Made by a program: the position numbers and the translations under genes
Assembly (NCBI GenBank): GCA_010909165.1
Contig: MU008162.1
Span: 2,046,001 to 2,110,000 of the forward strand
DNA length: 64,000 bases
Reading direction: 5' to 3'
Origin: Anthoceros angustus
Taxonomy: Eukaryota; Plantae; Anthocerotophyta
In this document: in pieces, positions 34,360 to 50,212 of the stretch
How positions within the stretch are numbered: the first letter of the stretch is position 1
How the letters are laid out: every line of letters starts with the position of its first letter
Notes under the pieces: model-generated
Seen by the model: the letters and a program-made list of their open reading frames with translations, nothing else
Database searches by the model: none
What the model was told of the DNA's origin: nothing

Positions 34360-36495
34360 TCATTTGTCATCTCCACAGGAACACAAACCATCCCTGAAAT
34401 GATGCACACGGTGGGCATCTCGAACAATAATTTCCCTCTTTTCAACCCTGGAAACTGTCTTGGAGCCGATATGGCAGTGATCGCACATTCTAAGATTCTT
34501 CACTATGAGCAGACTTGTGCCTGGAGGTGTGTTGAGGAGCCCAAATGCCAAGGCCAGCTTCTCAGCATGTCCACACAGGGCATCTTCCTTCTCATCCTCA
34601 GGAAGTGCTCCCAGCACAGGACTAACATGCCCTGTCCCCCGGGCCTGCAAAGTCAGACTTTTCAGCTTTGCAGATAGGTCCGCCCTCTTTTCTCCAACAA
34701 CGAATTCGTGCACCTTGTTGTCAACTTCTATGGCGGCCATTGCAGGCTTCTTCTGAATCCCTGCAGACCTTCTTAAGTGATTGATGTCCCTTTCATCTTC
34801 CCACCTTCCTGCATCCGCATACATTTCTGACATCAAAGTATAGGCAGCTGGGTGTTCGGGTTCAATCTGAAAAATGTGGTCAAAGCAGCGCCTTCCCATA
34901 TCAATGTTGCCATACACTTTGCATGCACTCAGCAAAGCCCTCCAACCAGCACTGTCATGTTCGGATGGCAAAGACTGCAACATGGTTTCTGCCTCTTCCA
35001 GTTTGCCTGATCGGCTGAGAACATCAACCATGCAAGTGTAGTGCTCTCCTATAGGTGTGATTCCATGCAAGTCCACCATCTCCTTGAAGTACTGCCGAGC
35101 CTCTTCCACTAGGCCCACATGACTGCAAGCAGCCAGGAGACAAGTAAAGGTTGCAGAGTCAGGCTCCACTCCCCTTTGTCGCATTTCCTCAAAACATTGC
35201 AAAGCCATGCCACATTTGTTATGCTGGCCATACCCTTTGATGAGAGCAGTCCATGACACAACATCCTTTTTTGTCAATCTGTCAAATACTGTGCGGCCTT
35301 CATCCACACTACCACACTTGACATACATGTCCACCAGTGCATTCCCGACTTTGGTCTCTGATTCCAGCTCCCTTTCCAGAATTTGGGCGTGGATTTGCTT
35401 GCCCTCTTTGATGGCCCCTATGCTACCACATGCTTTTAAGATGCCCACAAATGTTATGTCATTAGCAGGAGATGTGCCATCCTGCTCCATGCTTCTGTAG
35501 AGTTCAATGGCTTCCAGACCAAGACCCTGTTGGGCATATCCAGTGATCATGGCACTCCATGTCACAACATCTTTCTTGTTCAATCTATCAAACACAGAGC
35601 GCGCCTCCTCTAGACAACCACATTTGGAATACATGTCGACCAGGGCGTTTCCAATGAAGACATCTGATTCAAGCCTCCTTCTTTGGATCTGTGCATGGGC
35701 TAACTTTCCAACCTGTATGGCTGCCGTGCTGCCACAAGATTTCAAAACGCTAACAAAAGTATATTTATCTGGTGTCATGTCATACTGCTCCATGCTTGCA
35801 AATAACTGGAGGGCTTCTTGACCCAAACCATGATGGGAATAGCCCGCTATCATTGCATTCCAGGACACCATATCTCTAGTTGACAACCTGTCAAAGACTA
35901 CGCGAGCATCCTCCAGACTTCCACATTTACAGTACATGTCCACCAACGTATTGGCGACATATACATTAGATTCAAACCCACTGTCAATCACATCAGCATG
36001 AACCAGTCTGCCAGACTTCAAATCTGCTGCACTGGCACAAGCTTTGAGCACAGCAACATACACGAAGTCATCTGGCAGAACACTTGATTTCCGCAACTGC
36101 TGATACACTGTCACTGCCTGCTTTGGCTGCCCGTTTTCCGCATACGCTGAGATGATTGACGTCCAACAGAATGCATTTGGTTTAGGCAGTTTGCTGAAAA
36201 CTCGGGCCGCCTCCAGCAGATCCCCGTGGAAGCCATACATGCGTATGATGCGATTTGCCAGAATCATATTCAACTCATGCCCAGTGCTTACAGCAAGAGC
36301 ATGAACCCGCTTGCCAAGGACCAGATCCTTCTTTGCAATACACCCTTGCAGGAGACGATACAACATGTCCAAGCTGATGCAGCTTTCGTGATGTTCCATC
36401 TTGTCCACAACATGAAAGGCCTTCTGGAGCTCTCCCTCATCACATAGTCTGCTCCAGGCTTCAAATACGAAGACACCGCCGTCATGCGCTGCCAC
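34360..36495 (-). CDS. PLS-class PPR protein with E1-E2 and DYW:KP deaminase domain (candidate U-to-C organellar RNA editing factor)
   Basis: About 14 P/L/S repeats; KKPAMAAIEV in place of the PG box; GHAEKLALAFGL; NLRMCDHCH; ends CSCGDDK. The real start and transit peptide are probably upstream (~36685, MLAVSRRNV...) across apparent frameshifts. Confidence 0.93.
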   Translation of the reverse strand: MAAHDGGVFVFEAWSRLCDEGELQKAFHVVDKMEHHESCISLDMLYRLLQGCIAKKDLVLGKRVHALAVSTGHELNMILANRIIRMYGFHGDLLEAARVFSKLPKPNAFCWTSIISAYAENGQPKQAVTVYQQLRKSSVLPDDFVYVAVLKACASAADLKSGRLVHADVIDSGFESNVYVANTLVDMYCKCGSLEDARVVFDRLSTRDMVSWNAMIAGYSHHGLGQEALQLFASMEQYDMTPDKYTFVSVLKSCGSTAAIQVGKLAHAQIQRRRLESDVFIGNALVDMYSKCGCLEEARSVFDRLNKKDVVTWSAMITGYAQQGLGLEAIELYRSMEQDGTSPANDITFVGILKACGSIGAIKEGKQIHAQILERELESETKVGNALVDMYVKCGSVDEGRTVFDRLTKKDVVSWTALIKGYGQHNKCGMALQCFEEMRQRGVEPDSATFTCLLAACSHVGLVEEARQYFKEMVDLHGITPIGEHYTCMVDVLSRSGKLEEAETMLQSLPSEHDSAGWRALLSACKVYGNIDMGRRCFDHIFQIEPEHPAAYTLMSEMYADAGRWEDERDINHLRRSAGIQKKPAMAAIEVDNKVHEFVVGEKRADLSAKLKSLTLQARGTGHVSPVLGALPEDEKEDALCGHAEKLALAFGLLNTPPGTSLLIVKNLRMCDHCHIGSKTVSRVEKREIIVRDAHRVHHFRDGLCSCGDDK

Positions 36496-37353: not shown

Positions 37354-40300
37354 ATGGATCCGAGAAAGTTAAAGCGAGAACTGCTTGACTTGGAGGCAGC
37401 CATGAAAGAGGACCAGGAGGCCCTGCAAATGATTGATCAGAGAGAGCACGCTATGAAGGAAAGGGAGGATGCTTTCCGGGAGCTGCAAGAGAGGGAGGCT
37501 GCGTTGAAGCAGAGGGAGGACGCTTTGCAAGAGTTGCGGCTGAGGGAAGAGGCTTTGAAACAGAGGGAAGACGCATTGCGGCAGCTTCGGGAAAGGGAGG
37601 AGGCTCTGAAGCAGAGGGAGGATGCCGCGCTCGTTGAATTGCGACGTAGGGAGGCGGCTGTGAAACAAAGGGAGGAGGAATTAATGGGCAGAGGAGCAAC
37701 AACAGCAAGCCGAGAAAGAGGTCGGGCTGTCCCTGAGTTCGTGCCTCAGCACATAGCCTTGTCTCCTCCTCCTTCTGCCAGTTCCTTTGGACAGGATAGT
37801 GGCTATGAAAGGATCTCTGAAGACAGGTACCGGATTCGATTATGTTGGAATATGCAGTGGTAGAGGTCTTTGTTCTGCACCCATGTTATCTATTGGTTGC
37901 TCTCTGCCACCACAGAGAGAGCATGGAGAGTGAGGAGGACTACAACTATGCCTCTGAGAGACCAGACATGGAGGAGGAGGAATACACATCTGCTGATGGC
38001 AGTGATGAGGATTTTGATGAGGAAACCATGTACGACAACAACTCTGGAGGCGATGACTTTGAAACAGACGCCCCAACCTCACCTGATGGTGAAGAGTCTG
38101 AAGAATTGGAGGAGGAATCTCGGAAACCTCTTACAGCAGCACAGAGAAGATGGAGGAGGGCCTACTTCTTGATAAGGAAGCATCTGGTAGGCTACATTGT
38201 CGTTTCTGCATCTTCCACAGCTTCCATGATTCAGGTTCCACAGCCTCCCTACATTTGCAGGCTATTACAAAACATGGCATGCGTACTACGATTGGCACAG
38301 GAGCAGAAATGGAGGGTTTTGCTCTAGGCTTTGTGCCAGCGAAACATCCTGTGCGGATGAAAGTCTTTGCTTTCTTGTATCACCAGTATCCACACCCGGC
38401 AGTGGGGGTTTATTTTTGGCGCGTACATGTTTAGCTTCTCGGGACTTCGGAGGGTCTACTCTCCTTTACCTCTTATCTGCAGACGCACTGAGTACTGTCT
38501 GGCTTTTCTCATATGCGCACACCTCATAATACTGGTTATGAAGGCACAAGTGGAGGATATTGGGATGAAGCCTAACAGATCAGCATTAGACCTTGCAGAT
38601 GCTGTGGTGACCTTTTTGTACACGTATGGTCTTCTCGCCATCTTGGCCATTGGCTTGCTTAGTTACTGTGATGAAAAAGGTTGGCTGAGCATACTGAACC
38701 CAACTGTTTCAGCGTTGAGATGCTTCTGCGTATTCTGTGCTTGGGCTTTGCTCGGGGTGAGCACACGTTTCTCAAGAACAGCTACAACAAGCTTGATTTT
38801 GTCATCGTCTTCGACTCCTGGTAAGCTTGTGTACTGCTTAGTTGCTCACATTTGATTTCCAACAGGTGATATTATTAACATTATAATTTCAATACCTTTC
38901 CTGTGTTTGATGAGGTGTGAGGCTGCTAAGTCTAGTCTCTCTTGTGTGACTCGTAGGATACATCTTCTAGTCAAACTTATTACCAAGAAGGACACTTTTG
39001 CCCGAATTGCAGTATTTCGTGCTTTCCGAGTCTTGCCGATTCTGCGGTCATTCTCTTTCTTTGGAAATCTCTTAGTATGTGGTCAATGTTGCTATCTTAT
39101 GCAGTCGTTTTCTACCCTCACAACTCCTGCACAGCAAAAGAGACTTGATTCCACATATTGCTTGTATTTCAGGCAATATTAGAAGCCAGCAGGCGTTGCA
39201 TTGCTCCACTCAATAATGTTATCATCCTCACATTCTTCATTCTCTCCTTTTATGGCCTCGTGGGTGTTCAAACCTTTGGAGGGTCCCTAAGCCGCAGGTA
39301 GAATGTCACAACTTGCTCTTATGCTTCATGCTCAAGATCTTGGTCAGTAAGAATGGTGTCTTCATAATAGCAAAGGGGAAAGTCTGTACGTCTGTTAGAA
39401 GTTTTGCGTCATGTATGTAAGGTAATGAGACTCGTTCCAAAGACCACCTCCTTGTCTTCATGAAAACCATCCGTACTTTGTCCTTCTCAAACTTGATTTC
39501 ACAGGTGTGTAAGTTTTTATCCCTTATCCAACACCACTTTCCAAGAGCAGTTTCCTGAAAAATCCTGCGGAATCGGAAAGGGTTATCAGTGTCCTGATCA
39601 ACAAGTCTGCGAGGTGACCCAGGATCTTCCGTCCTTGCATTCAATATGCCTCTGTTTGATGTACATAAACGAAATCATCATGCCCAAGCAGTTTCATTGA
39701 ATTATTATTACTCATATATGAATCATAGTTTCTGGAAAATCCAAACTGGGGAGCAATGAACTTCGATAGTTTTCCGTATGCCATTTTGACGATGTTCCAA
39801 GTATGGAGTTTTGAAAATTCATAAGTTAACTGGAAAGAAATAAAAGAATATGCAAATTGGATATAATATAATTAATTTCTTATGTATTAAATAACAGGTT
39901 ATAACTTTTGCTGGTTGGAGTACTATTATGTATTCCGTGGAGGATGCAGAATCTCAAGCATCATGTGTATATCTGTGTATTCTATATATATTATTAAATA
40001 TATTTAAATATAAATATTTAATAATTTTTAATTGCAGCTGTATATTTCATCACTTTATGTGTGTTTTGGAAGCTATTTTCTAGTTAGTGTTTTCGTAGCA
40101 GCAATAAGCGGTGTTTTTCTAAGAGTTCAAGAGAGCACCGGTTACATGTATTGATTGAAATAAATTTAATTATGGATTTATTTTAAATATAATTTATATA
40201 AATAGACAGTATTTTCATTCCAATCAGATTCTTATAAAAAGACATCGGCAAGTTACACAATCCTCTCTTCACAGCTCTAAAGTGATGGAAAAGGTTTACA

Positions 40301-43300
40301 AGGAAATAGGATATGATGCTAGTGAAAGACCTTCTTGGCAAGGGCAACTACATAGGAAATCAATCAACGTCGTGAAAACAGCACATCGACGGACATTGAA
40401 GATATTCCGATCTTTTTCAGTTGTAGTGCTTGGTCGAAGAAAAATAAGTTTTGCAAATAATGTTCAAACATCTTTACCGTTGGGACCCTTCTCAATTAGC
40501 TACACTGTGGCTGACAGAGCCAAAGCTTTAGTGCTCGGTCCTACTTTCATATATGGCGCTCAGATTATGATAACTATGAATGTGTGTATACTTTGTTTAT
40601 ATCACGAAGGAATGTCTGATGAGTTTCATGATTTGTTATGTATCCATAAAAGTTTTTTTCATGTTAAATGTAGACAAGATGGAAGTTTTTACTAACACTG
40701 TGAGTTCCTTAATAACAAAAGATGTTTTGGAAGCAATAATGCTTTTAGCCTTTATCATAGAAATGTGCTTACGGTTCATTGCAGCGGGATTGAAGGAGTT
40801 TGTTGATGATGGTATTCTACTATTTATTTGATAAGTTTGTTTAAAATTGTGTTATTATTTCTAGAATCATACCCTTAATGTTTCACACTAATATTTTGTT
40901 CCAGGTATGAATATATTTGACGTTATTATAATTGTATTATCGTGTGTTTCACTAGCAACTCGTTTGTACCCAAATATCTCAGCAATTAGAGCTTTGCGTT
41001 GGTTCTACAGACCTGGAAAGACCGATGTTACAAACCGATCTATCATGGTTTGCAACTCCAGTTCCTTTTCATTAGGTTGCTAATGAGAAGAATGAACGAT
41101 ATAAGTTCAATCAATCATAGAGGCTCTACAAGCTCTATAAAGTGTCATCCTTGGAATGCATATGTATCAAACAAACAAAAAAACATCGGAATGAAATAAT
41201 ATTTCTTCAATAATAAATATATGATATTTATGAGCTCCTCCACTTACTTAAGCTTTGTTGCGCAGACCGATTGTATTAGAAGTTTGGGAGCGTTGTCCAG
41301 CTTGATATTCTTCTATTGCCTGATCATTTTTATATATGCCATTATTAGTATGGAACTTTGGGGTGGTGAGTTTTATAATTTTGATGACGGTTATCCAAGA
41401 CAAAACTATGATACTATATTTAGAGCAATGCTCTCTTGGTTCATAATTACCACAGCAGAGAGTTGGCCATGGACTATGGGTAATTCAATGCGACCTGGAG
41501 TAAGGAATAAGTAAATGACACAACATAGATATAATACGTTAACTATCAAATAATTATATTGATGCAAGGATTATCACACTATGTGTTTGCCAATCTTTTT
41601 TGTCATCCAAATACAAGACCCATATCCTTTGCAGATGGACAGCACCAATTCTGTTTGTGTTCTACTTCGGATTCACAGTATATGTAATTCTCAATTTGAT
41701 CATAGCAATTATATTAGAAAAGAGTGAGATGACAGATCGCCAGAAAAAACATATACAAAAGGTTTGACTATGAAACCTAGTCTGGTGTACTTATCATTCT
41801 TACTTTGAGGTTTTACAGGTCTTATTTCCTATAGGCCAGATAACCAGTTCTAATTCTAGCACTCTCGTTTAGGAAAGTTAAATATATTATATCTTTTGTT
41901 CATCTTAAAACTTACTATTACCTCAAATAACCAAATAAAACTCTACCACTCTTGGCAGACCGAACACTTGAAAGCCTTGCGGAAGAAACAAGCGCAATCG
42001 TGCTACACAAATAGACGAGGCAGCTGGTTTGTAGATGCAATGTCCACTGCTCACGCTGGTGTGAAGGGCATAGCAAGGAAAATAAATTCATCAATGAGGG
42101 TGAGCCAGATTTACATCCCAGGACGTTTATCTATGCTGGCCTATCGTGGGCGAAAAGGCCGAGCAGACACCAGGAATCCCGACTCTGGCAATGGGCTTGC
42201 TGGCGAAACCTCGCAAACATCCATGCCTTCATCTTCGTTGAACGATCACACCCATCATGCCCATGGTCTACCACATCATGCTAATTTACGCCGTCGTTCC
42301 ACCCAGCGAGGATATCAGCTGCTTCACCAAACAGGCTTCCGAGGCAGCTTAGGGAGGGAAGGAAGTATAAGGCCTACTGCATTGGAGAGCTCAGTGTTGG
42401 CCTTGATGGAGGAGCAAGAATCTGGCTACAAGCCAGAGCCTAGTGGTACACTCCAATCCTCTGGGGATATGGCAGGGTCTGGTGATGACAGAAGTAGAAC
42501 TCGGACTTCTTTTCGTCTTGCTGACTTCGAGGAATTCGAAAGCACAAGTGCTCGAACCAAGGCCCCCTGGTACATCACGGATTCAGCTCTGTTTCTATTC
42601 GGGAGTGAGAACAAATTTCGAGTTGTTTGTCAGAGGCTCATGGATAGCAAATGGTATAGAAGATTCATATTCTTTATGGTCTTCGTGAGCATTGTAGCAA
42701 CGGTTGAAACCAACCCCCAGGGAAAGCCAATTGTGGCTCCGATTATCATTGACAGCGCCAACAAGGCTGTCTTAGTGGTTAGTGCTTCTCTGGGACGGCG
42801 GTGTACATGCTATCAGTATGCTTGAGGGTCGAAGCAACATGTAAGTATCCCTTTGCCTTGCAGGTGTTTGGACTGGACATAGTCTGCAAAAGCGTAAGCT
42901 ATGGGTTCCTGCTGACTCCGGATGCCTATCTGGGAGATGCCTATAATTTTTTGGATCTGTTCAACTTTGTAGTTGATCTCTTAGCAACTCTGCCTGGCTG
43001 GTCTCAGTACTGGCTGAGAGTCCTGCGGATGCTTGTTGCCTTCCGACCTACAAGGCTTATTGTCCGAATTTCTGGTCTTCGGGATCTTGTTACATCCTTG
43101 CTTTTCACTGTTCCAGCCATCGCATCGACTCTGGCTTTTAGTCTGACTATATTTGCCATATTTGCAACAATAGGACTACAGCTCTTCAGGGGCCGGTTCA
43201 ATGCTTGCAATGACGACTCAGTCAGTAATCGCCTTGAATGTGTGGGCGTGTTTGAGAATTCATCAGGTAAGACTCTGGCACAAGTTAAGCTGGTTTGCAT

Positions 43301-45577
43301 CCCAGCTCTGATCCATCATTCTTGAAGCCTCGGGGCAGCACTCAGCTCATTGTTTTGTTGGCTGATACTGTGACTCACGCTGTAATTGTATCAGGAGTCC
43401 TTGCACCTCGTCTTTGGGAGACGCCTACTTATCATTTTGATGACATTGGCAATGCCATGCTGTCTCTTTATGTTTGCTCGACATTCGACAACTGGGTCTC
43501 CTATTTTTTGAATACAGCCATGGATATCCCCTCAGATCCAAATGACCAGCCAAGAAGAAACCACAGCTCTTTAAATGCCCTGTTTTTTGTGGCATTTGTC
43601 TTCATAGGGGGACACTTCGTTGTGCGTATGTTTGTCGGAGTGTTTGTGGATCAGTTTGGGATTGTGTCAGGCTCTAAGCTACTGACTGAGCGACAGAAGC
43701 TCTGGAGAGACAACAACCGGATAATTCAGAGGCTTTCACCAACTCGCATGCCAACTAAGCCTCGTGGAAAGCTCCGAAGTGTATGTTTTAGGATTGCTCA
43801 TTCAGTGGGTTTTGGACGGCTGATTGTGCTCCTGGTTGTCGCTAATTTCGTCTGCCTAGCCAGCCAGACATTTCATACAAACATAACACCCAGGGTTTCA
43901 GCAGTGGAGCACAGATTTATTCAAGTTGATGCAGCGTTTGTGTTTGTGTTTTCCATGGAACTTGCAATCAAGCTACTTGGCTCTAAGGTAAGGCTTGTTC
44001 TCTGTTTCCTCAGATTGGTGCTACACGGACAGGTTTACTTCCTCCTAACACGTTGCACCTGCTTTGGTATGACGGTGGGCAGTTCCATGACTGGTGTGTA
44101 AACTTCTGGAACTTCTATGAAGGGATCATAGTTATCGGTTCAGCATTTTGCATCTTTCCTGCTAGAGGAACCACCAGGCTCAAAGTGGGGCGTGTGTTTT
44201 TTCTCGTCCGAATATTTCGGATCATCCGATACATCCCTCCACTCCACGCACTGGTCCAGACTGTGTTTGTGAGTTTGCCTTCAATGGTCCACATCATAAG
44301 TCTGCTCTTGATTATTCTTTTCGAGTTTGCTGGAGTCGGAGTCCAGATGTTCTCCCATGTCACGGATGGAGCTTGCATCGGTCCCCACATGAATTTCAGG
44401 ACATTCGTGAATGCATTTGTGGTTGTGTTCCAGGTTCGATCTCTCATCCTGCCTAACAACTCATCTTCTTGCTCTAATATTCTACCTCGAAGCCAGATGT
44501 GACGACCTTGGTGCCTGCCAGTGTCCCGTCACTCCTAACAAACCATTTGCTGCCAGGTTGCCACAGCTGATAACTGGTCTTGCATTATGAACGATTGTCG
44601 AGTACAGTACCCGTCATGTGCCAAGAGCAGTAATCTGACTCAAGACGAATGCGGTTTCTCAGCAGGAGCTCTCGTCTACTTTATTTTCCTGGTGGCCTCA
44701 ACTACATGGATCTGCACAAACTTGTTTGTAGCTGAGATCCTGGATACCATCACCTTTGGATTATTGAATGAAGAAGCCATGATCACTCCCAGCCATCTGC
44801 TCGACTTTCAGACGCTGTGGGCCCACAGTGAATTCGACCCGAAGTATGATTTCCACCAAACATTGGGTCTTGCATCTGCCCTGTCAGTGCTGGGTATCCA
44901 TCCATTCTTGTATGCCATCTTCTCGGGGCTCCCTGTGCAGGAGGAAGGGGTTCATTGGGCTTCACAAACTTCGAACTTTCTTGAATTGCCTGGGCCTGCC
45001 CTTGGGCCGAAGGCCAAATGCTCCTGCCAAGTGGTAAGATTCATGTCACCTTATCATCCTCCGTTCAAACCTGATTCAGTATGGATGCTCAGAAATGCTT
45101 CCTGGTATCAGGTATACAAGGATCGAGTACGAGGTCATGAGTTTTCACCAACGGGGCAAGGGCGTTCCATTCAAGCAGTTGCTGGAAACACTCACCCTGT
45201 ACAAGATCGGGGCACAGGTATTGACAATTGCAAATGCAGTAATCCTAAAGCCACATTAACCGAAACACAAGCTTGTTAGAATACTATGAGGGGCTGGCAA
45301 ATAAATGCAGGGCCTGGAGCTTGCCTTGCGGATAGAAAGGGAGAAACAGATACAGCATGTGTACAGGCACGGAGCTGCCACGAAAATTCAAGCAGCGATC
45401 AGAGGGTTCATCGTGAGGGCCAGGTTGAAGAAGTTGGAGGAGACCAACGCGGAAATCGATCCTGCAGCCTTGGATGCTGGACAAAAATTAGATCCGGATT
45501 CTGAGTTCACTTTCAGGATAAAGAACATGTTGGATCTCAAACTGGAGATTTTCATGCTCAAGACATTGTGGTTCTAA
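37354..45577 (+). CDS. Four-domain voltage-gated cation channel alpha subunit (Cav/Nav superfamily), multi-exon
   Basis: Four S1-S6 repeats with S4 segments (FRAFRVLPILR; AIRALRWFYR; LRVLRMLVAFRPTRLIVR; KVGRVFFLVRIFRIIR). Four pore loops (FQ|VITFAGW, FIITTAESW, YVCSTFDNW, FQ|VATADNW). DIII-IV linker LLTERQKLW, EF-like C-terminus FQTLWAHSEFDPK and IQ motif IQAAIRGFIVR. GT-AG introns. Confidence 0.93.
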
Positions 45578-45729
45578 CTTCTAAGCTCTTTCAGGTTCTC
45601 CATGAAGTCGCTTGCTTGTACAAGTCAAGACTGTCCCTCTTACAACTTCTTCATTCACCAGCGTGCCGAAGAAACCCACCAGCTTAGATACTCAAGGCAG
45701 ACTTGGGCATATCCACATCCCTGAGTGCT

Positions 45730-46362
45730 ATGGCGTCTGCCCAGTTGCTTCCCGGACGAACCCTGCATAGCCCTGGGCTAGTCCTGCGTCGGCTGCCTTC
45801 TATTCCTCGGTTACGTCCGGTGGCTGGACGGTTTAGGCGTCTTGAGGGACCCAGCACAGTCTTCGTGAAGGCCTGCAGCGATGCCGGGAATCCGTCTTCC
45901 AGCGCTGTTCCGGGGCCGGGATTTGAGGACCCCAACAAGGAGGTTGCGACACCCGCCTGGAAGAGGTGGCAGAGCAATGCAGCGGACATGAGGGCGCAGG
46001 TGGCCAAGCTTGGCCTGGCTGCGGTGCTAGCTTACGGCCTCTTCGATGGTGTCACCTACACCACCTTCTTCTTCCTGGCCTTCCTGGGCTACGAGAAGAG
46101 CACTGGGAACAACCCGGCTGCCAACATCCAGGCCCTGCTCGGGATCGTCATCACCATGTGGGCCGGCAACAATGTGACCAGACCCTTCCGGGTGGCTGGA
46201 GCAGCTGCCATTGCTCCAGTTGTTGACAGGTTCTTGAAGAAAGTGCAGAAGGTGCTGAAGCTGCCGAACCAAGCCTTCGCTTTCATGCTGGTGGTGGCTT
46301 CTTTCGCCTTCCTCTGCTTCTCGCTGGTTGGCCTTCTAATCCTGTCACGTTGGGGAAGATGA
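45730..46362 (+). CDS. Single-exon putative plastid-targeted membrane protein (DUF1279/FAM210-like)
   Basis: Arg/Ser-rich transit-like N-terminus followed by conserved-looking LGLAAVLAYGLFDGVTY...WAGNNVTRPFRVAGAAAIAP and a hydrophobic C-terminus. Confidence 0.75.
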   Translation: MASAQLLPGRTLHSPGLVLRRLPSIPRLRPVAGRFRRLEGPSTVFVKACSDAGNPSSSAVPGPGFEDPNKEVATPAWKRWQSNAADMRAQVAKLGLAAVLAYGLFDGVTYTTFFFLAFLGYEKSTGNNPAANIQALLGIVITMWAGNNVTRPFRVAGAAAIAPVVDRFLKKVQKVLKLPNQAFAFMLVVASFAFLCFSLVGLLILSRWGR

Positions 46363-46940: not shown

Positions 46941-49209
46941 CTACGATTCGGGATCTGCTCTTCCACCAAACAGCTTTACGCAGGATGTCGGTGTCAACTG
47001 CTCCACACACGCAGGGCAGTCTTCCCTCACACTTCTAAAAGAGAAGTAGGCAAAAAGTTCCTCAGGAAGGCCCTCTTCGTCAGCGGATAGGGAGCCCTGG
47101 GATTCAGAAACTTCTATGTGAAGCCTCTGCCGGCCAAGTTGCTTGAGCATGTGCCCTGCTGCAAACGCCGGTGAACCTTCCACCCAGAAATACTTCAAAT
47201 CCGGCCCTGCTTGAGAGAAGGCCTTGGCCACACCCTCAGCAGTGAAGGGACAATGCCGGAACTCGAGCCGTCTAAGACTGCGGCACCCCCGAAGCAGATC
47301 CTTCAACCCATCGTCGTCGTCCCCAGCGCAAACCAGACATATCCATTTCAGCGTCGACCCACCATTCTCCCCGATATGCCGCAGCCCAACATTTGTCAAA
47401 CTGCCTGCCCTCATCGCCAGCGCCAGCTTAGTGAGCGCCCTACACCTTTGCATAATGTACAGAATGCCCTCGTCTATGGGAACAAGCTGCGAGTGGTCCA
47501 CCTTCTGGACTATGATCAACCGCAAGTCGTTCAACTTCCTGCAGTTCTCCCCCAAAGCCTTCAACGCATCATTGGACAACTTCGCAGCATAAACAGTGAG
47601 AAACTCCAGCTCGGAGCACCCTCTAGCCAACGCTGTTATCCCCTCCTGCGTGACCTCGTTCTCAGCATCCTCATCCACGTCCAACCTCTCCACCCTAAGC
47701 TTCTTCAACGACTTGCAATGCGCAGCAATCACCCGAAGCCCAGCATCCCCAATCATAGGCCTCACCTGGAGAGCAAGAAACAACAACCACATCCTGTCAG
47801 CCAAACTCCAAGGCACCACACCACATCACCATCCTCCACATCCTTCCTCACCTCAAGCGCCTCCAGGTGCTTGCAATGCGCAATGAGCTCCATCACACTC
47901 TCCCGACTGAGATCAGCCAACTTCAAGTCCAGGTTCCTGAGCGTCCCACTCAACGGCAGCAGCATGGGCAGATGAACATCCGCAGCATCGTACAACCCGG
48001 ACAGCGACACTAGCCTGTCAGGCAACAGCCGCCCAAACCTCCCGGCCTCATCTTCTGGAAACAACCCCGTCCCAAGCTCCCTTAGCGCAGGAGCCCTAGC
48101 CAAAACCTCCCAACACGCATCCTGCTGCTTCCACACCCCCAACCTCAAGCTCCTCAACCCACGGCAAGACCGAACAAGCACCCCCAAGTCCTCCATCTCC
48201 GGCCCCTTCGCGTCCGGTTCTTCATCATCCCCAACCCCTTCTGGGTCAGGATCCGGCAGCAGCAGCTCCTCCAAACGCGGGTTGTTTCCCGCCAGCACTT
48301 TGAGCCAGTCCCCCCGCATATCGTCCATCCGGCTGCTGGCCATGTCCAGCGTCCTGAGCGACCTGCCATGCATCCGCCACTCCAGCCCCCGTCACCCACA
48401 GCACCAACTCCGAGCGACCCAATTTACCCAATTCCAACCCAATTACGAGCAACCCAAGTCCTAGCAACCCATTTCCAACCCAACTCCGAGCAACCCAAAC
48501 AACGAGCAACCCAGCTCCACACAACCCAAATCCTAGCAACCCATTTCCAAGCCAACTCCCGGCAACGCAATTCCCGAGCAACCCAACTCCGAGCAACACA
48601 TTTCCAATCCAACTCCGAGGAACCCAAGTCCAAGCACCCCAATTTCCGCCATCCCTCGACTCGACCTGATTGAAGCCTACCTGCAGGAGTGGGCGAGCAT
48701 GAGGAGGCCGTGCGCGGAGAAGCCATCGCACTTGTCCAGCACGAGGCGCTGGAGGGCGCGGCCGCATCCGGCCGCGAGGGTCTCCAAATCCGCGTCGTTC
48801 ACGACTGCCCGCTTGAGGTAGAGCGACTCGAGGGCGGGGTACTTGGCGGCGATCGCGCAGATCCAGTCCCGGCGCGGCCGCCCCAGTCGGCGGCCAGCTG
48901 CTGGAACTCCATGGCGCGCGGACGGCACTTGAGCTTGATGCGCTTGAGGCTGTGGAACCTGCGGGTGAGCCGGTCCGGGTACGCGGCGTAGCAGTTGGCC
49001 ACCGTGACCTCGGCCCGCATCCGGCCGTCCACGAAGCACCAGCGCGAGCAAACCTCCGAGGCCGCGTGCAGCGCCTGCACGTCCGATTCCAAGTACCGGA
49101 AAATGGACTCCAGCAGCGGCCCGCGCAGCACCTCGTCCATGGCCCCCTCGCCCTCCTCGGCCTCGTCGCCCTGCGGCAGGGAGAGCAGCATCCGCTTGGA
49201 GCTGGCCAT
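46941..49209 (-). CDS. COI1-like (TIR1/COI1 family) F-box/LRR protein; 3 exons (49209-48681, 48362-47852, 47765-46941) with one 1-bp frameshift at ~48869
   Basis: F-box LLESIFRYL..ASEVCSRW; TVANCYA; LKCRPRAMEF..WGG; LVLDKCDGFS; LRVER; DLRL; LEFRHC; YFWVEG; ELFAYFSF..REDCP. Intron positions match the family. Confidence 0.88.
48385..48640. repeat. Imperfect tandem repeat inside intron 1 of the COI1-like gene
   Basis: Recurring gagcaaccca / ctagcaacccatttccaa / caactccgag units. Confidence 0.8.
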
Positions 49210-50212
49210 GGCGGCTGAGGGCCGCGGCTGGGGGCCCCAACCAACTCGCACCATCATCTCCTTCCACACCTGTTCCTGTTTCACATCGGCATCACACCTC
49301 CTCTGCTGCTGGCAGCTGGACCCTGGAGCCTGGGGCCTGGAGCCTGGGGCCTGGAGCCCGAGCCCGAGCCGCCCAGGCCAGGGAGGGAGGAAGGAAGGAA
49401 TGAAGGCTGGAGGAAGGAAGGAAGGAAGGAAGGAAAGGAGCAACCGGCGTTGCAGAAGATGCGGACAGCCGCAGGCTCGGGACGCCGCACATGCATCGTC
49501 GTCTACTGTGTTCATGTTTTATAATAATCTAACAAGCGTCAGGCGATGTCGGACAACTCTGTTCACCTCACGCTGTTGATAATGCTCGCAAAAGGCCTTG
49601 TCGTTGGCTTAACGACCGAGCCTGTGACGGGAGCTTCCCCGGCCAATCCGCTCTGACTCTTACGCTGGCCTGCTTCGCTAATATGGCCGGCTTCTCTATT
49701 AGCGGAGACGTTGATGGGTTGATGGGTTGATGGGCATGATATGGCAGACTCCTGTCGTCGTTGTTTGGAAGTTTTGGGGCTCGCCGTTTTCCCGTTGCGT
49801 GACACAGCGGGGCCGGGGGCGGGCTCGCTGTCCGAAGTTGAAGAACGGAGTTGTGTTGGTGTTGCGTGAGACCGTGGTCCACGTATGTCGGTTGTTTTGT
49901 TGTATGTCGGGGACCTACACTTGTATAGAAATCCTTTGGCTTTTTTTATGGAGTTCTAGAACACGGACGCGCGAAGACAAAAAGACACTAGTGAGATCAT
50001 AAACAAAGGGCGCTGTACTCTGCTGCTGCAGCAACACAGCAACACAGCAACGCAGGCGACCAAGTTGGTTCCTGACGATTTGGAAACAACCTAATCAACA
50101 AAGATTCCAAAGGTGTATGGTATGGTATATCCATTACACATCCGGTTCTTGAGAAAAGTTTTTTTCCCTCTCTACAAAATGGAATACTATATTCATGTAT
50201 ATTTTCGTCCAC

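What the first reader, a model, noticed from the sequence alone, without database searches (positions are those of the whole stretch)
39898..44577. Atypical selectivity filter A-E-D-D
Seen: filter-position residues are DI T-F-A-G-W (GCT, 39910-39912), DII T-A-E-S-W (41458-41460), DIII T-F-D-N-W (43487-43489) and DIV T-A-D-N-W (44569-44571). The DI and DIV loops are each split by a phase-0 intron after FQ. Established filters are EEEE (HVA Cav), EEDD (T-type), DEKA (Nav) and EEKE (NALCN). Inference: this is an EEDD-type filter that lost its domain-I carboxylate, which could change Ca2+ versus monovalent selectivity.
Basis: partly seen in the sequence, partly recalled or inferred. Interest (0 to 1): 0.85.

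Follow-up and report, generated by a model that had tools for sequence, protein, structure and literature searches.

The report
Hornwort calcium channel missing one acid
A hornwort carries a four-domain calcium-type channel, a family that reviews say land plants lack, and its ion filter has only three acidic residues instead of the four seen in other plants, which probably makes it less calcium-selective and offers a natural test case.

Summary
The filter residues are A (GCT, 39910-12), E, D, D, in register with Cav1.1, and no other splice acceptor, alternative exon or editing gives an acid. The gene (24 exons, about 1,880 aa, 37354-45577) belongs to a land-plant four-domain channel clade found here in liverworts, mosses, lycophytes, a fern and Ginkgo, with no flowering-plant hit. 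All 13 other plant loci read at domain I have E. A second genome on the same branch (hornwort position; synonymous sites saturated) has S-E-D-D, so the loss of the acid is a lineage trait, not a base error. The clade is sister to green-algal EEDE channels; its EEDD is convergent with T-type. Best reading: a voltage-gated, Ca2+-permeable but weakly selective cation channel (Nav2 DEEA/DEES-like, neutral residue in domain I), probably acting in motile sperm. Selectivity and sperm role are inferred, not measured. Caveats: only two genomes on this branch; the next exon (40038-40140) has three single-base indels in homopolymer runs, probably assembly errors; no spliced RNA covers the domain-I pore. 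The scan noted this channel only on this same stretch, not on other DNA.

The parts
37354..45577 (+). [quoted passage not shown]
   Evidence: exon/phase table, 23 of 24 exons open with GT-AG ends; 21 of the 22 exons compared keep the length modulo 3 of L001; Ion_trans in five exons
38957..39074 (+). DI S4 voltage sensor exon (four Arg)
   Evidence: 92% identical to L001
39729..39800 (+). DI P1 helix exon ending in FQ, phase 0
   Evidence: 88% identical to L001
39898..39964 (+). DI filter and P2 helix exon (TFAGW)
   Evidence: least conserved pore exon versus L001, 68% over 22 codons
39910..39912 (+). DI filter codon GCT = Ala (L001 TCG = Ser; other plants GAA/GAG = Glu)
40038..40140 (+). DI S6 exon; as assembled carries +1 (T run, about 40064-67), -1 (A run, about 40128-30) and -1 (G run at the donor, about 40140); probably assembly errors
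   Evidence: 31 of 32 codons same amino acid as L001, 18 synonymous-only changes
40905..41047 (+). DII S3-S4 exon; short, charge-poor S4 as in all plant orthologues
41458..41460 (+). DII filter codon GAG = Glu; next residue Ser, no 'beacon' Asp
42864..43266 (+). DIII S2-S5 exon with S4 (five Arg); its 3' junction is spliced in run X15
43487..43489 (+). DIII filter codon GAC = Asp
44083..44433 (+). DIV S3-P1 exon with S4 (five Arg, one Lys)
44569..44571 (+). DIV filter codon GAT = Asp
45374..45430 (+). C-terminal IQ calmodulin-binding motif
   Evidence: Pfam IQ, E 2.7e-5, above cut-off

Best explanation
[quoted passage not shown] Shown: the ancestral land-plant filter is E-E-D-D; on the branch holding this genome and L001 the domain-I Glu is replaced by a small neutral residue (Ala, Ser) while the gene stays under strong purifying selection. 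Inferred: S4 charges open the pore on depolarisation; three carboxylates from DII-DIV, no Lys and no beacon Asp leave a weaker Ca2+ site, so the channel passes Ca2+ together with monovalent cations, much like animal Nav2 (DEEA/DEES) with the neutral residue moved from domain IV to domain I; the IQ motif gives calmodulin feedback. Inferred from distribution only: it works in the biflagellate sperm, coupling depolarisation to Ca2+ entry and flagellar steering, like Chlamydomonas CAV2.
For: Codons and register. DI = E in 13 land-plant loci from liverworts, mosses, lycophytes and a fern, and in the algal sister clade. L001 has Ser with the same second-position C and pairs with the window at 100/100 outside the moss, liverwort and vascular clades. 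pN 0.126 against saturated pS 0.77 over 17 exons. S4 charges and IQ kept. Single Glu-to-Ala changes in Cav1.2 weaken Ca2+ block 10-50-fold (PMC2233694). Nav2 filters with three acids plus A/S/G/T are non-selective (PMC6259924). Plant hits come only from groups with flagellated sperm, including Ginkgo. CAV2 is flagellar, and a similar link to flagellated gametes is proposed for diatoms (PMC11085791).
Against: No electrophysiology exists here, and filter letters do not fix selectivity (turrets switch T-type EEDD channels to Na+; PMC6259924). Only two genomes on the branch, neither named by a tool. The DI S6 exon is frameshifted as assembled, and X1 does not supply the two missing bases (11 gap letters, all net deletions). 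The one RNA run shows retained introns and a skip of DIV, and no spliced DI pore. No sperm expression data. The absence from flowering plants rests on ranked hit lists, not an exhaustive search.
Confidence: 0.55

Rival explanations
1. The substitution is real but functionally buffered: the channel stays Ca2+-selective because DII-DIV acids and outer-vestibule acids do the work. Both hornwort-branch copies have Glu ten residues after the filter where vascular plants have Lys or Gly.
For: Filters with a neutral domain-I residue (NEEE) are classed as calcium-like (PMC6259924). The extra Glu at +10 is in both copies. Fresh-water Na+ is low, so high selectivity may not be needed (inference).
Against: No beacon Asp in any domain. 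Position +10 lies at the far end of the P2 helix (inference from the Cav1.1 alignment). Single Ala changes measurably weaken Ca2+ binding in Cav1.2.
Confidence: 0.25
2. Domain I no longer shapes the filter, or the protein is poorly conducting: constraint on the DI and DII P2 helices relaxed on this branch and A/S is drift rather than tuning.
For: The DI filter exon is the least conserved pore exon between window and L001 (pN 0.26 against 0.07-0.11); the DI and DII loops differ at 4 and 3 of 14 residues, DIII and DIV at 1 and 3. Two different residues occupy the site.
Against: Only 22 codons, so the contrast is weak. TFxGW, the P1 helix, S4 and S6 are strongly kept. A/S interchange is also what Nav2 shows at its neutral site.
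Confidence: 0.1
3. The copy in this genome is a very recent pseudogene: the three indels in exon 40038-40140 are real, and this allele makes no full channel.
For: In-frame stop at 40083-85 as assembled. X1 agrees on the two missing bases, and the RNA run shows mostly partly spliced 3' transcripts.
Against: All three indels sit in single-base runs within a 21-25% GC stretch. X1 drops bases in such runs even where the RNA of the same sample agrees with the window. The other 23 exons have no lesion, and the exon shows 18 synonymous to 1 replacement change. It would not explain Ser in the intact L001 copy.
Confidence: 0.07
4. GCT is a base-calling error for an acidic codon.
For: The codon lies 130 nt from an apparently unpolished exon; the covering DNA run may be the assembly's source; no RNA covers it.
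Against: Glu would need two substitutions. An independent genome has Ser with the same middle C. The nearby errors are indels, not substitutions.
Confidence: 0.03

Closest known systems
Land-plant four-domain channels: Marchantia Mp2g23520 (MARPO_0069s0001), Selaginella XP_024521493, Diphasiastrum, Ceratopteris KP509_11G019800, Sphagnum, Ceratodon, Ginkgo Gb_09885
   Same: Same clade; 43-51% identity over the DIII-DIV exon; shared intron sites; x-E-D-D filter; charge-poor DII S4; IQ motif
   Different: All have Glu in domain I wherever it could be read (not readable in Ginkgo). They are only auto-annotated; no functional paper was found in the searched library
Green-algal Cav-like channels (Chloropicon EEDE clade; Chlamydomonas CAV2 as functional model)
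   Same: Sister clade with 100% support; four domains; flagellated organisms
   Different: EEDE filter with four acids. CAV2 itself was not in my sequence set, so orthology to it is untested
Animal T-type Cav3 (EEDD)
   Same: E-D-D in domains II-IV
   Different: Separate clade; Cav3 has DI Glu and a DII beacon Asp and lacks the C-terminal IQ, the reverse of this protein
Animal Nav2 (DEEA, DEES, DEEG, DEET)
   Same: Three carboxylates plus one small neutral residue that varies A/S, no Lys; non-selective (PMC6259924)
   Different: Neutral residue is in domain IV; unrelated clade; a functional analogy only
Fungal and protist channels with neutral domain I (NEEE, TDEE, TEND, SESE, AGKE, SSKE)
   Same: No acid at the domain-I filter site (PMC6259924, PMC5824947)
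   Different: Other lineages, other residues; AEDD/SEDD is not among the filters named in the text I read

Membership tests
[quoted passage not shown] | Four 6-TM repeats in one gene, each with a P-loop | tested here: met
   exon map against Selaginella P0016 residues 85-1735; Ion_trans; PDB Cav/Nav hits. One exon is frameshifted as assembled
[quoted passage not shown] | Arg/Lys-rich S4 segments | tested here: met
   DI 4, DIII 5, DIV 6 charges; DII only 2-3, as in orthologues
[quoted passage not shown] | Voltage-gated current | not testable with these tools
   needs electrophysiology
Land-plant FVCC clade (Mp2g23520 family) | Falls inside the clade in a tree | tested here: met
   99/98 clade of 28 plant rows, single-exon tree
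Land-plant FVCC clade (Mp2g23520 family) | E-E-D-D filter | tested here: not met
   A-E-D-D against E in 13 other loci; Ceratopteris is EDDD
T-type Cav3 | EEDD filter with DII beacon Asp | tested here: not met
   A-E-D-D; residue after DII Glu is Ser
T-type Cav3 | Groups with Cav3 in a tree | tested here: not met
   plant orthologues group with green-algal EEDE channels, 100% SH-aLRT, quick tree; no AU test run
HVA Cav1/Cav2 | EEEE filter | tested here: not met
HVA Cav1/Cav2 | AID motif for the beta subunit | not tested
   PMC5824947 finds it only in the HVA clade
Nav1 / NALCN | Lys at the DII or DIII filter site | tested here: not met
   E and D
Nav2 (works-like comparison) | Three acids plus one small neutral residue, no Lys | tested here: met
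   A/S-E-D-D, but in a different domain and clade
Nav2 (works-like comparison) | Non-selective Ca2+/Na+ permeation | not testable with these tools
   needs bi-ionic reversal potentials

The most novel reading that the evidence does not exclude
Hornworts independently evolved a Nav2-like three-carboxylate filter in domain I, turning the land-plant sperm four-domain Ca2+ channel into a weakly selective cation channel, within a family that current reviews describe as absent from land plants.
Probability: 0.35. Interest if true: 0.8.

Novelty: new variant of a known kind. Interest (0 to 1): 0.62.

Why it matters
Reviews from 2018 to 2024 state that land plants lack four-domain Cav channels (PMC5824947, PMC6259924, PMC11085791), yet a clade of them spans bryophytes, lycophytes, a fern and Ginkgo, that is, plants with swimming sperm. 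Within it the hornwort branch is a natural experiment that removes one filter carboxylate. EEDE, EEDD, EDDD and A/SEDD orthologues form a ready series for testing how many acids, and in which domain, Ca2+ selectivity needs outside animals. Marchantia and Anthoceros are transformable (own knowledge), so the role in sperm steering can be tested directly.

Tried and rejected
Alternative acceptors and a hidden alternative exon for the DI loop: none gives an acid. RNA editing: C-to-U or U-to-C on GCT gives Val or Ala (reasoning). One-residue register shift: no acidic residue lies near the site. T-type ancestry: rejected. More genomes of the same branch: the DII-exon search found only L001 and a fragment without the DI pore; the metagenome scan gave no such locus; exact look-ups of ten window ORFs were blank. 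Loci L028 and L029 do not reach domain I. No shared neighbours with L001. Ten paper searches found no study of these plant channels; subscription papers are not covered. I recall conference abstracts on a Marchantia sperm channel called MpVICSPER1; the library has no hit and I could not check whether it is Mp2g23520. The Atlas search added only Ion_trans. Two rows of alignment A3 (P0243, P0309) were wrong slices and are ignored. A contrived open splice path around the broken exon exists (shifted donors and acceptor) but abandons the frame in which the exon is conserved, so I rejected it. Searching, folding or tree-building with the joined spliced protein was left out; all window work was exon by exon.

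Full report
Observation. The DI and DIV loops are each cut by a phase-0 GT-AG intron after FQ. The register is right: the DIII loop aligns TFDNW to Cav1.1 TFEGW, and the 22-residue DI exon aligns ITFAGW to Cav1.1 ITMEGW without gaps, with only L-type channels among its weak PDB hits. No other acceptor gives an acidic residue: three upstream AGs run into stops and the downstream one loses the Trp. The flanking introns, 97 and 73 nt, cannot hold an alternative exon.

Gene. Exon-by-exon comparison with locus L001 (Logan SRR33208241) and the Selaginella protein gives 24 exons from 37354 to 45577, about 1,880 residues. Twenty-three exons are open with canonical ends. S4 segments carry 4, 2-3, 5 and 6 positive charges, the weak DII sensor being typical of the plant orthologues, and there is a C-terminal IQ motif. 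One exon, DI S6 (40038-40140), has +1, -1 and -1 single-base indels relative to L001 and a stop as assembled. All three lie in single-base runs within a 21-25% GC stretch, and the exon is otherwise the best conserved in the gene: 31 of 32 residues equal, 18 synonymous-only codons. I read these as assembly errors (about 85-90%), but could not prove it. DNA run X1 has only deletions relative to the window there, so it does not supply the missing bases; it also drops bases in runs where the RNA of the same sample agrees with the window. Earlier notes on this genome also mention assembly errors (s1-267911, s1-324618; not checked).

Is the Ala real? X1 covers the codon with no listed substitution, but it may be the assembly's source, and the RNA run X15 does not cover the DI pore. 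The decisive evidence is comparative. L001 has TCG (Ser) at this codon, sharing the middle C. It is a distant genome: 82% protein identity in the largest pore exon, synonymous sites saturated (pS 0.77) against pN 0.126. Two independent genomes therefore lack the acid in a gene under strong purifying selection.

Family and polarity. The closest named proteins are Marchantia Mp2g23520, Riccia, Selaginella (several paralogues), Diphasiastrum, Ceratopteris, Sphagnum, Ceratodon and Ginkgo Gb_09885. Domain I is Glu in all 13 land-plant loci where it could be read. The consensus is EEDD, Ceratopteris is EDDD, and the sister clade with Chloropicon is EEDE. In a tree of one exon (43397-43987), window and L001 pair at 100/100 inside a 99/98 land-plant clade and outside the moss, liverwort and vascular-plant clades. 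That is the position expected of hornworts; short introns, about 50% GC and a DYW:KP-like PPR neighbour fit, but no tool named the species. A tree of full-length natural proteins places the plant clade with the algal EEDE channels and apart from Cav3 (quick tree, midpoint root, no AU test). So EEDD arose in plants separately from T-type, and the domain-I acid was then lost on this branch.

Mechanism. Shown: three filter carboxylates, no Lys, and no beacon Asp (the residues after the filter sites are G, S, N, N, as in most plant orthologues). From published work: single Glu-to-Ala changes shift Ca2+ block of Cav1.2 by 10-50-fold (PMC2233694); Nav2 channels with three acids plus A, S, G or T are non-selective (PMC6259924). 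Inferred: a depolarisation-opened, Ca2+-permeable, weakly selective cation channel with calmodulin feedback. Inferred from distribution alone: a role in flagellated sperm, since every plant hit is from a group with swimming sperm and none from flowering plants in the ranked lists, and Chlamydomonas CAV2 is flagellar (PMC11085791). I put the lineage-level loss at about 0.9 and the whole mechanism at 0.55. Rivals: buffered Ca2+ selectivity (0.25; both copies gain a Glu at +10), relaxed or poorly conducting pore (0.10; the DI filter exon is the least conserved pore exon, but only 22 codons), recent pseudogene (0.07), base error (0.03).

Comparison with what is known. Unusual filters, including neutral domain-I residues, are already recorded in fungi and protists (PMC5824947; PMC6259924), so the filter is a new variant, not a new class. 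A/S-E-D-D is not named in those texts. Three papers state that land plants lack these channels, which the public proteins found here contradict, although databases already auto-name the Selaginella copies as calcium channels. Ten searches of the open library found no study of them; subscription literature is not covered, and my recollection of abstracts on a Marchantia sperm channel could not be checked.

Limits and conduct. Only two genomes on this branch were obtained. The scan's other note on this stretch (s1-703613) calls the gene apparently intact; I agree on its identity but add the broken exon. My two genome-wide look-ups showed no second four-domain channel among the listed notes, which is not a test for paralogues.

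Verdict. Real feature, new variant of a known kind, interest 0.62: a confirmed lineage-specific filter change in an overlooked plant channel family, directly testable, with function still unmeasured.

Noticed in passing
window 40038-40140: DI S6 exon is frameshifted as assembled (three single-base indels in homopolymer runs, stop at 40083-85), so 'intact gene' needs this caveat.
   Followed up: yes
window 41992-44900: RNA-like run X15 shows spliced junctions 43266|43395, 43987|44083 and 44843|44941, a skip 43987|44666 that removes DIV S3 through the filter, and retained introns 42778-42863 and 44434-44556; the 5' half appears only unspliced at low depth.
   Followed up: partly
window 34360-36495 (-): PPR-E-DYW editing factor whose tail has KP and HAEK motifs and ends DDK; from memory this is the DYW:KP class linked to U-to-C editing in hornworts and ferns.
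   Followed up: partly
window 39940-39942 and L001 4344-4346: Both copies have Glu ten residues after the DI filter site where lycophytes have Lys or Gln and the fern Gly; a possible outer-vestibule compensation.
   Followed up: partly
P0243 (Ceratopteris), P0249 (Marchantia second paralogue): Ceratopteris has an EDDD filter and lacks the DIII Trp; the second Marchantia paralogue has Asp after the DIV filter residue (beacon-like). Selaginella holds several paralogues.
   Followed up: no
window 40784-40786: Run X1 differs from the window at three adjacent bases in the DII S2 exon; error or strain difference unresolved.
   Followed up: no
window 37354-37700: N-terminus is a coiled-coil-like run of 14-residue repeats rich in E, R, L and Q, also present in L001 but not in the Selaginella or Marchantia proteins aligned.
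   Followed up: no
window 39700-41950: The middle of the gene is AT-rich (GC about 0.33, introns near 0.2) against about 0.48 on either side.
   Followed up: partly
window 46941-49267 (-) and 45703-46362 (+): An F-box/LRR-type gene and a small membrane-protein gene with no Pfam match lie directly downstream; neither matches L001's neighbours.
   Followed up: partly
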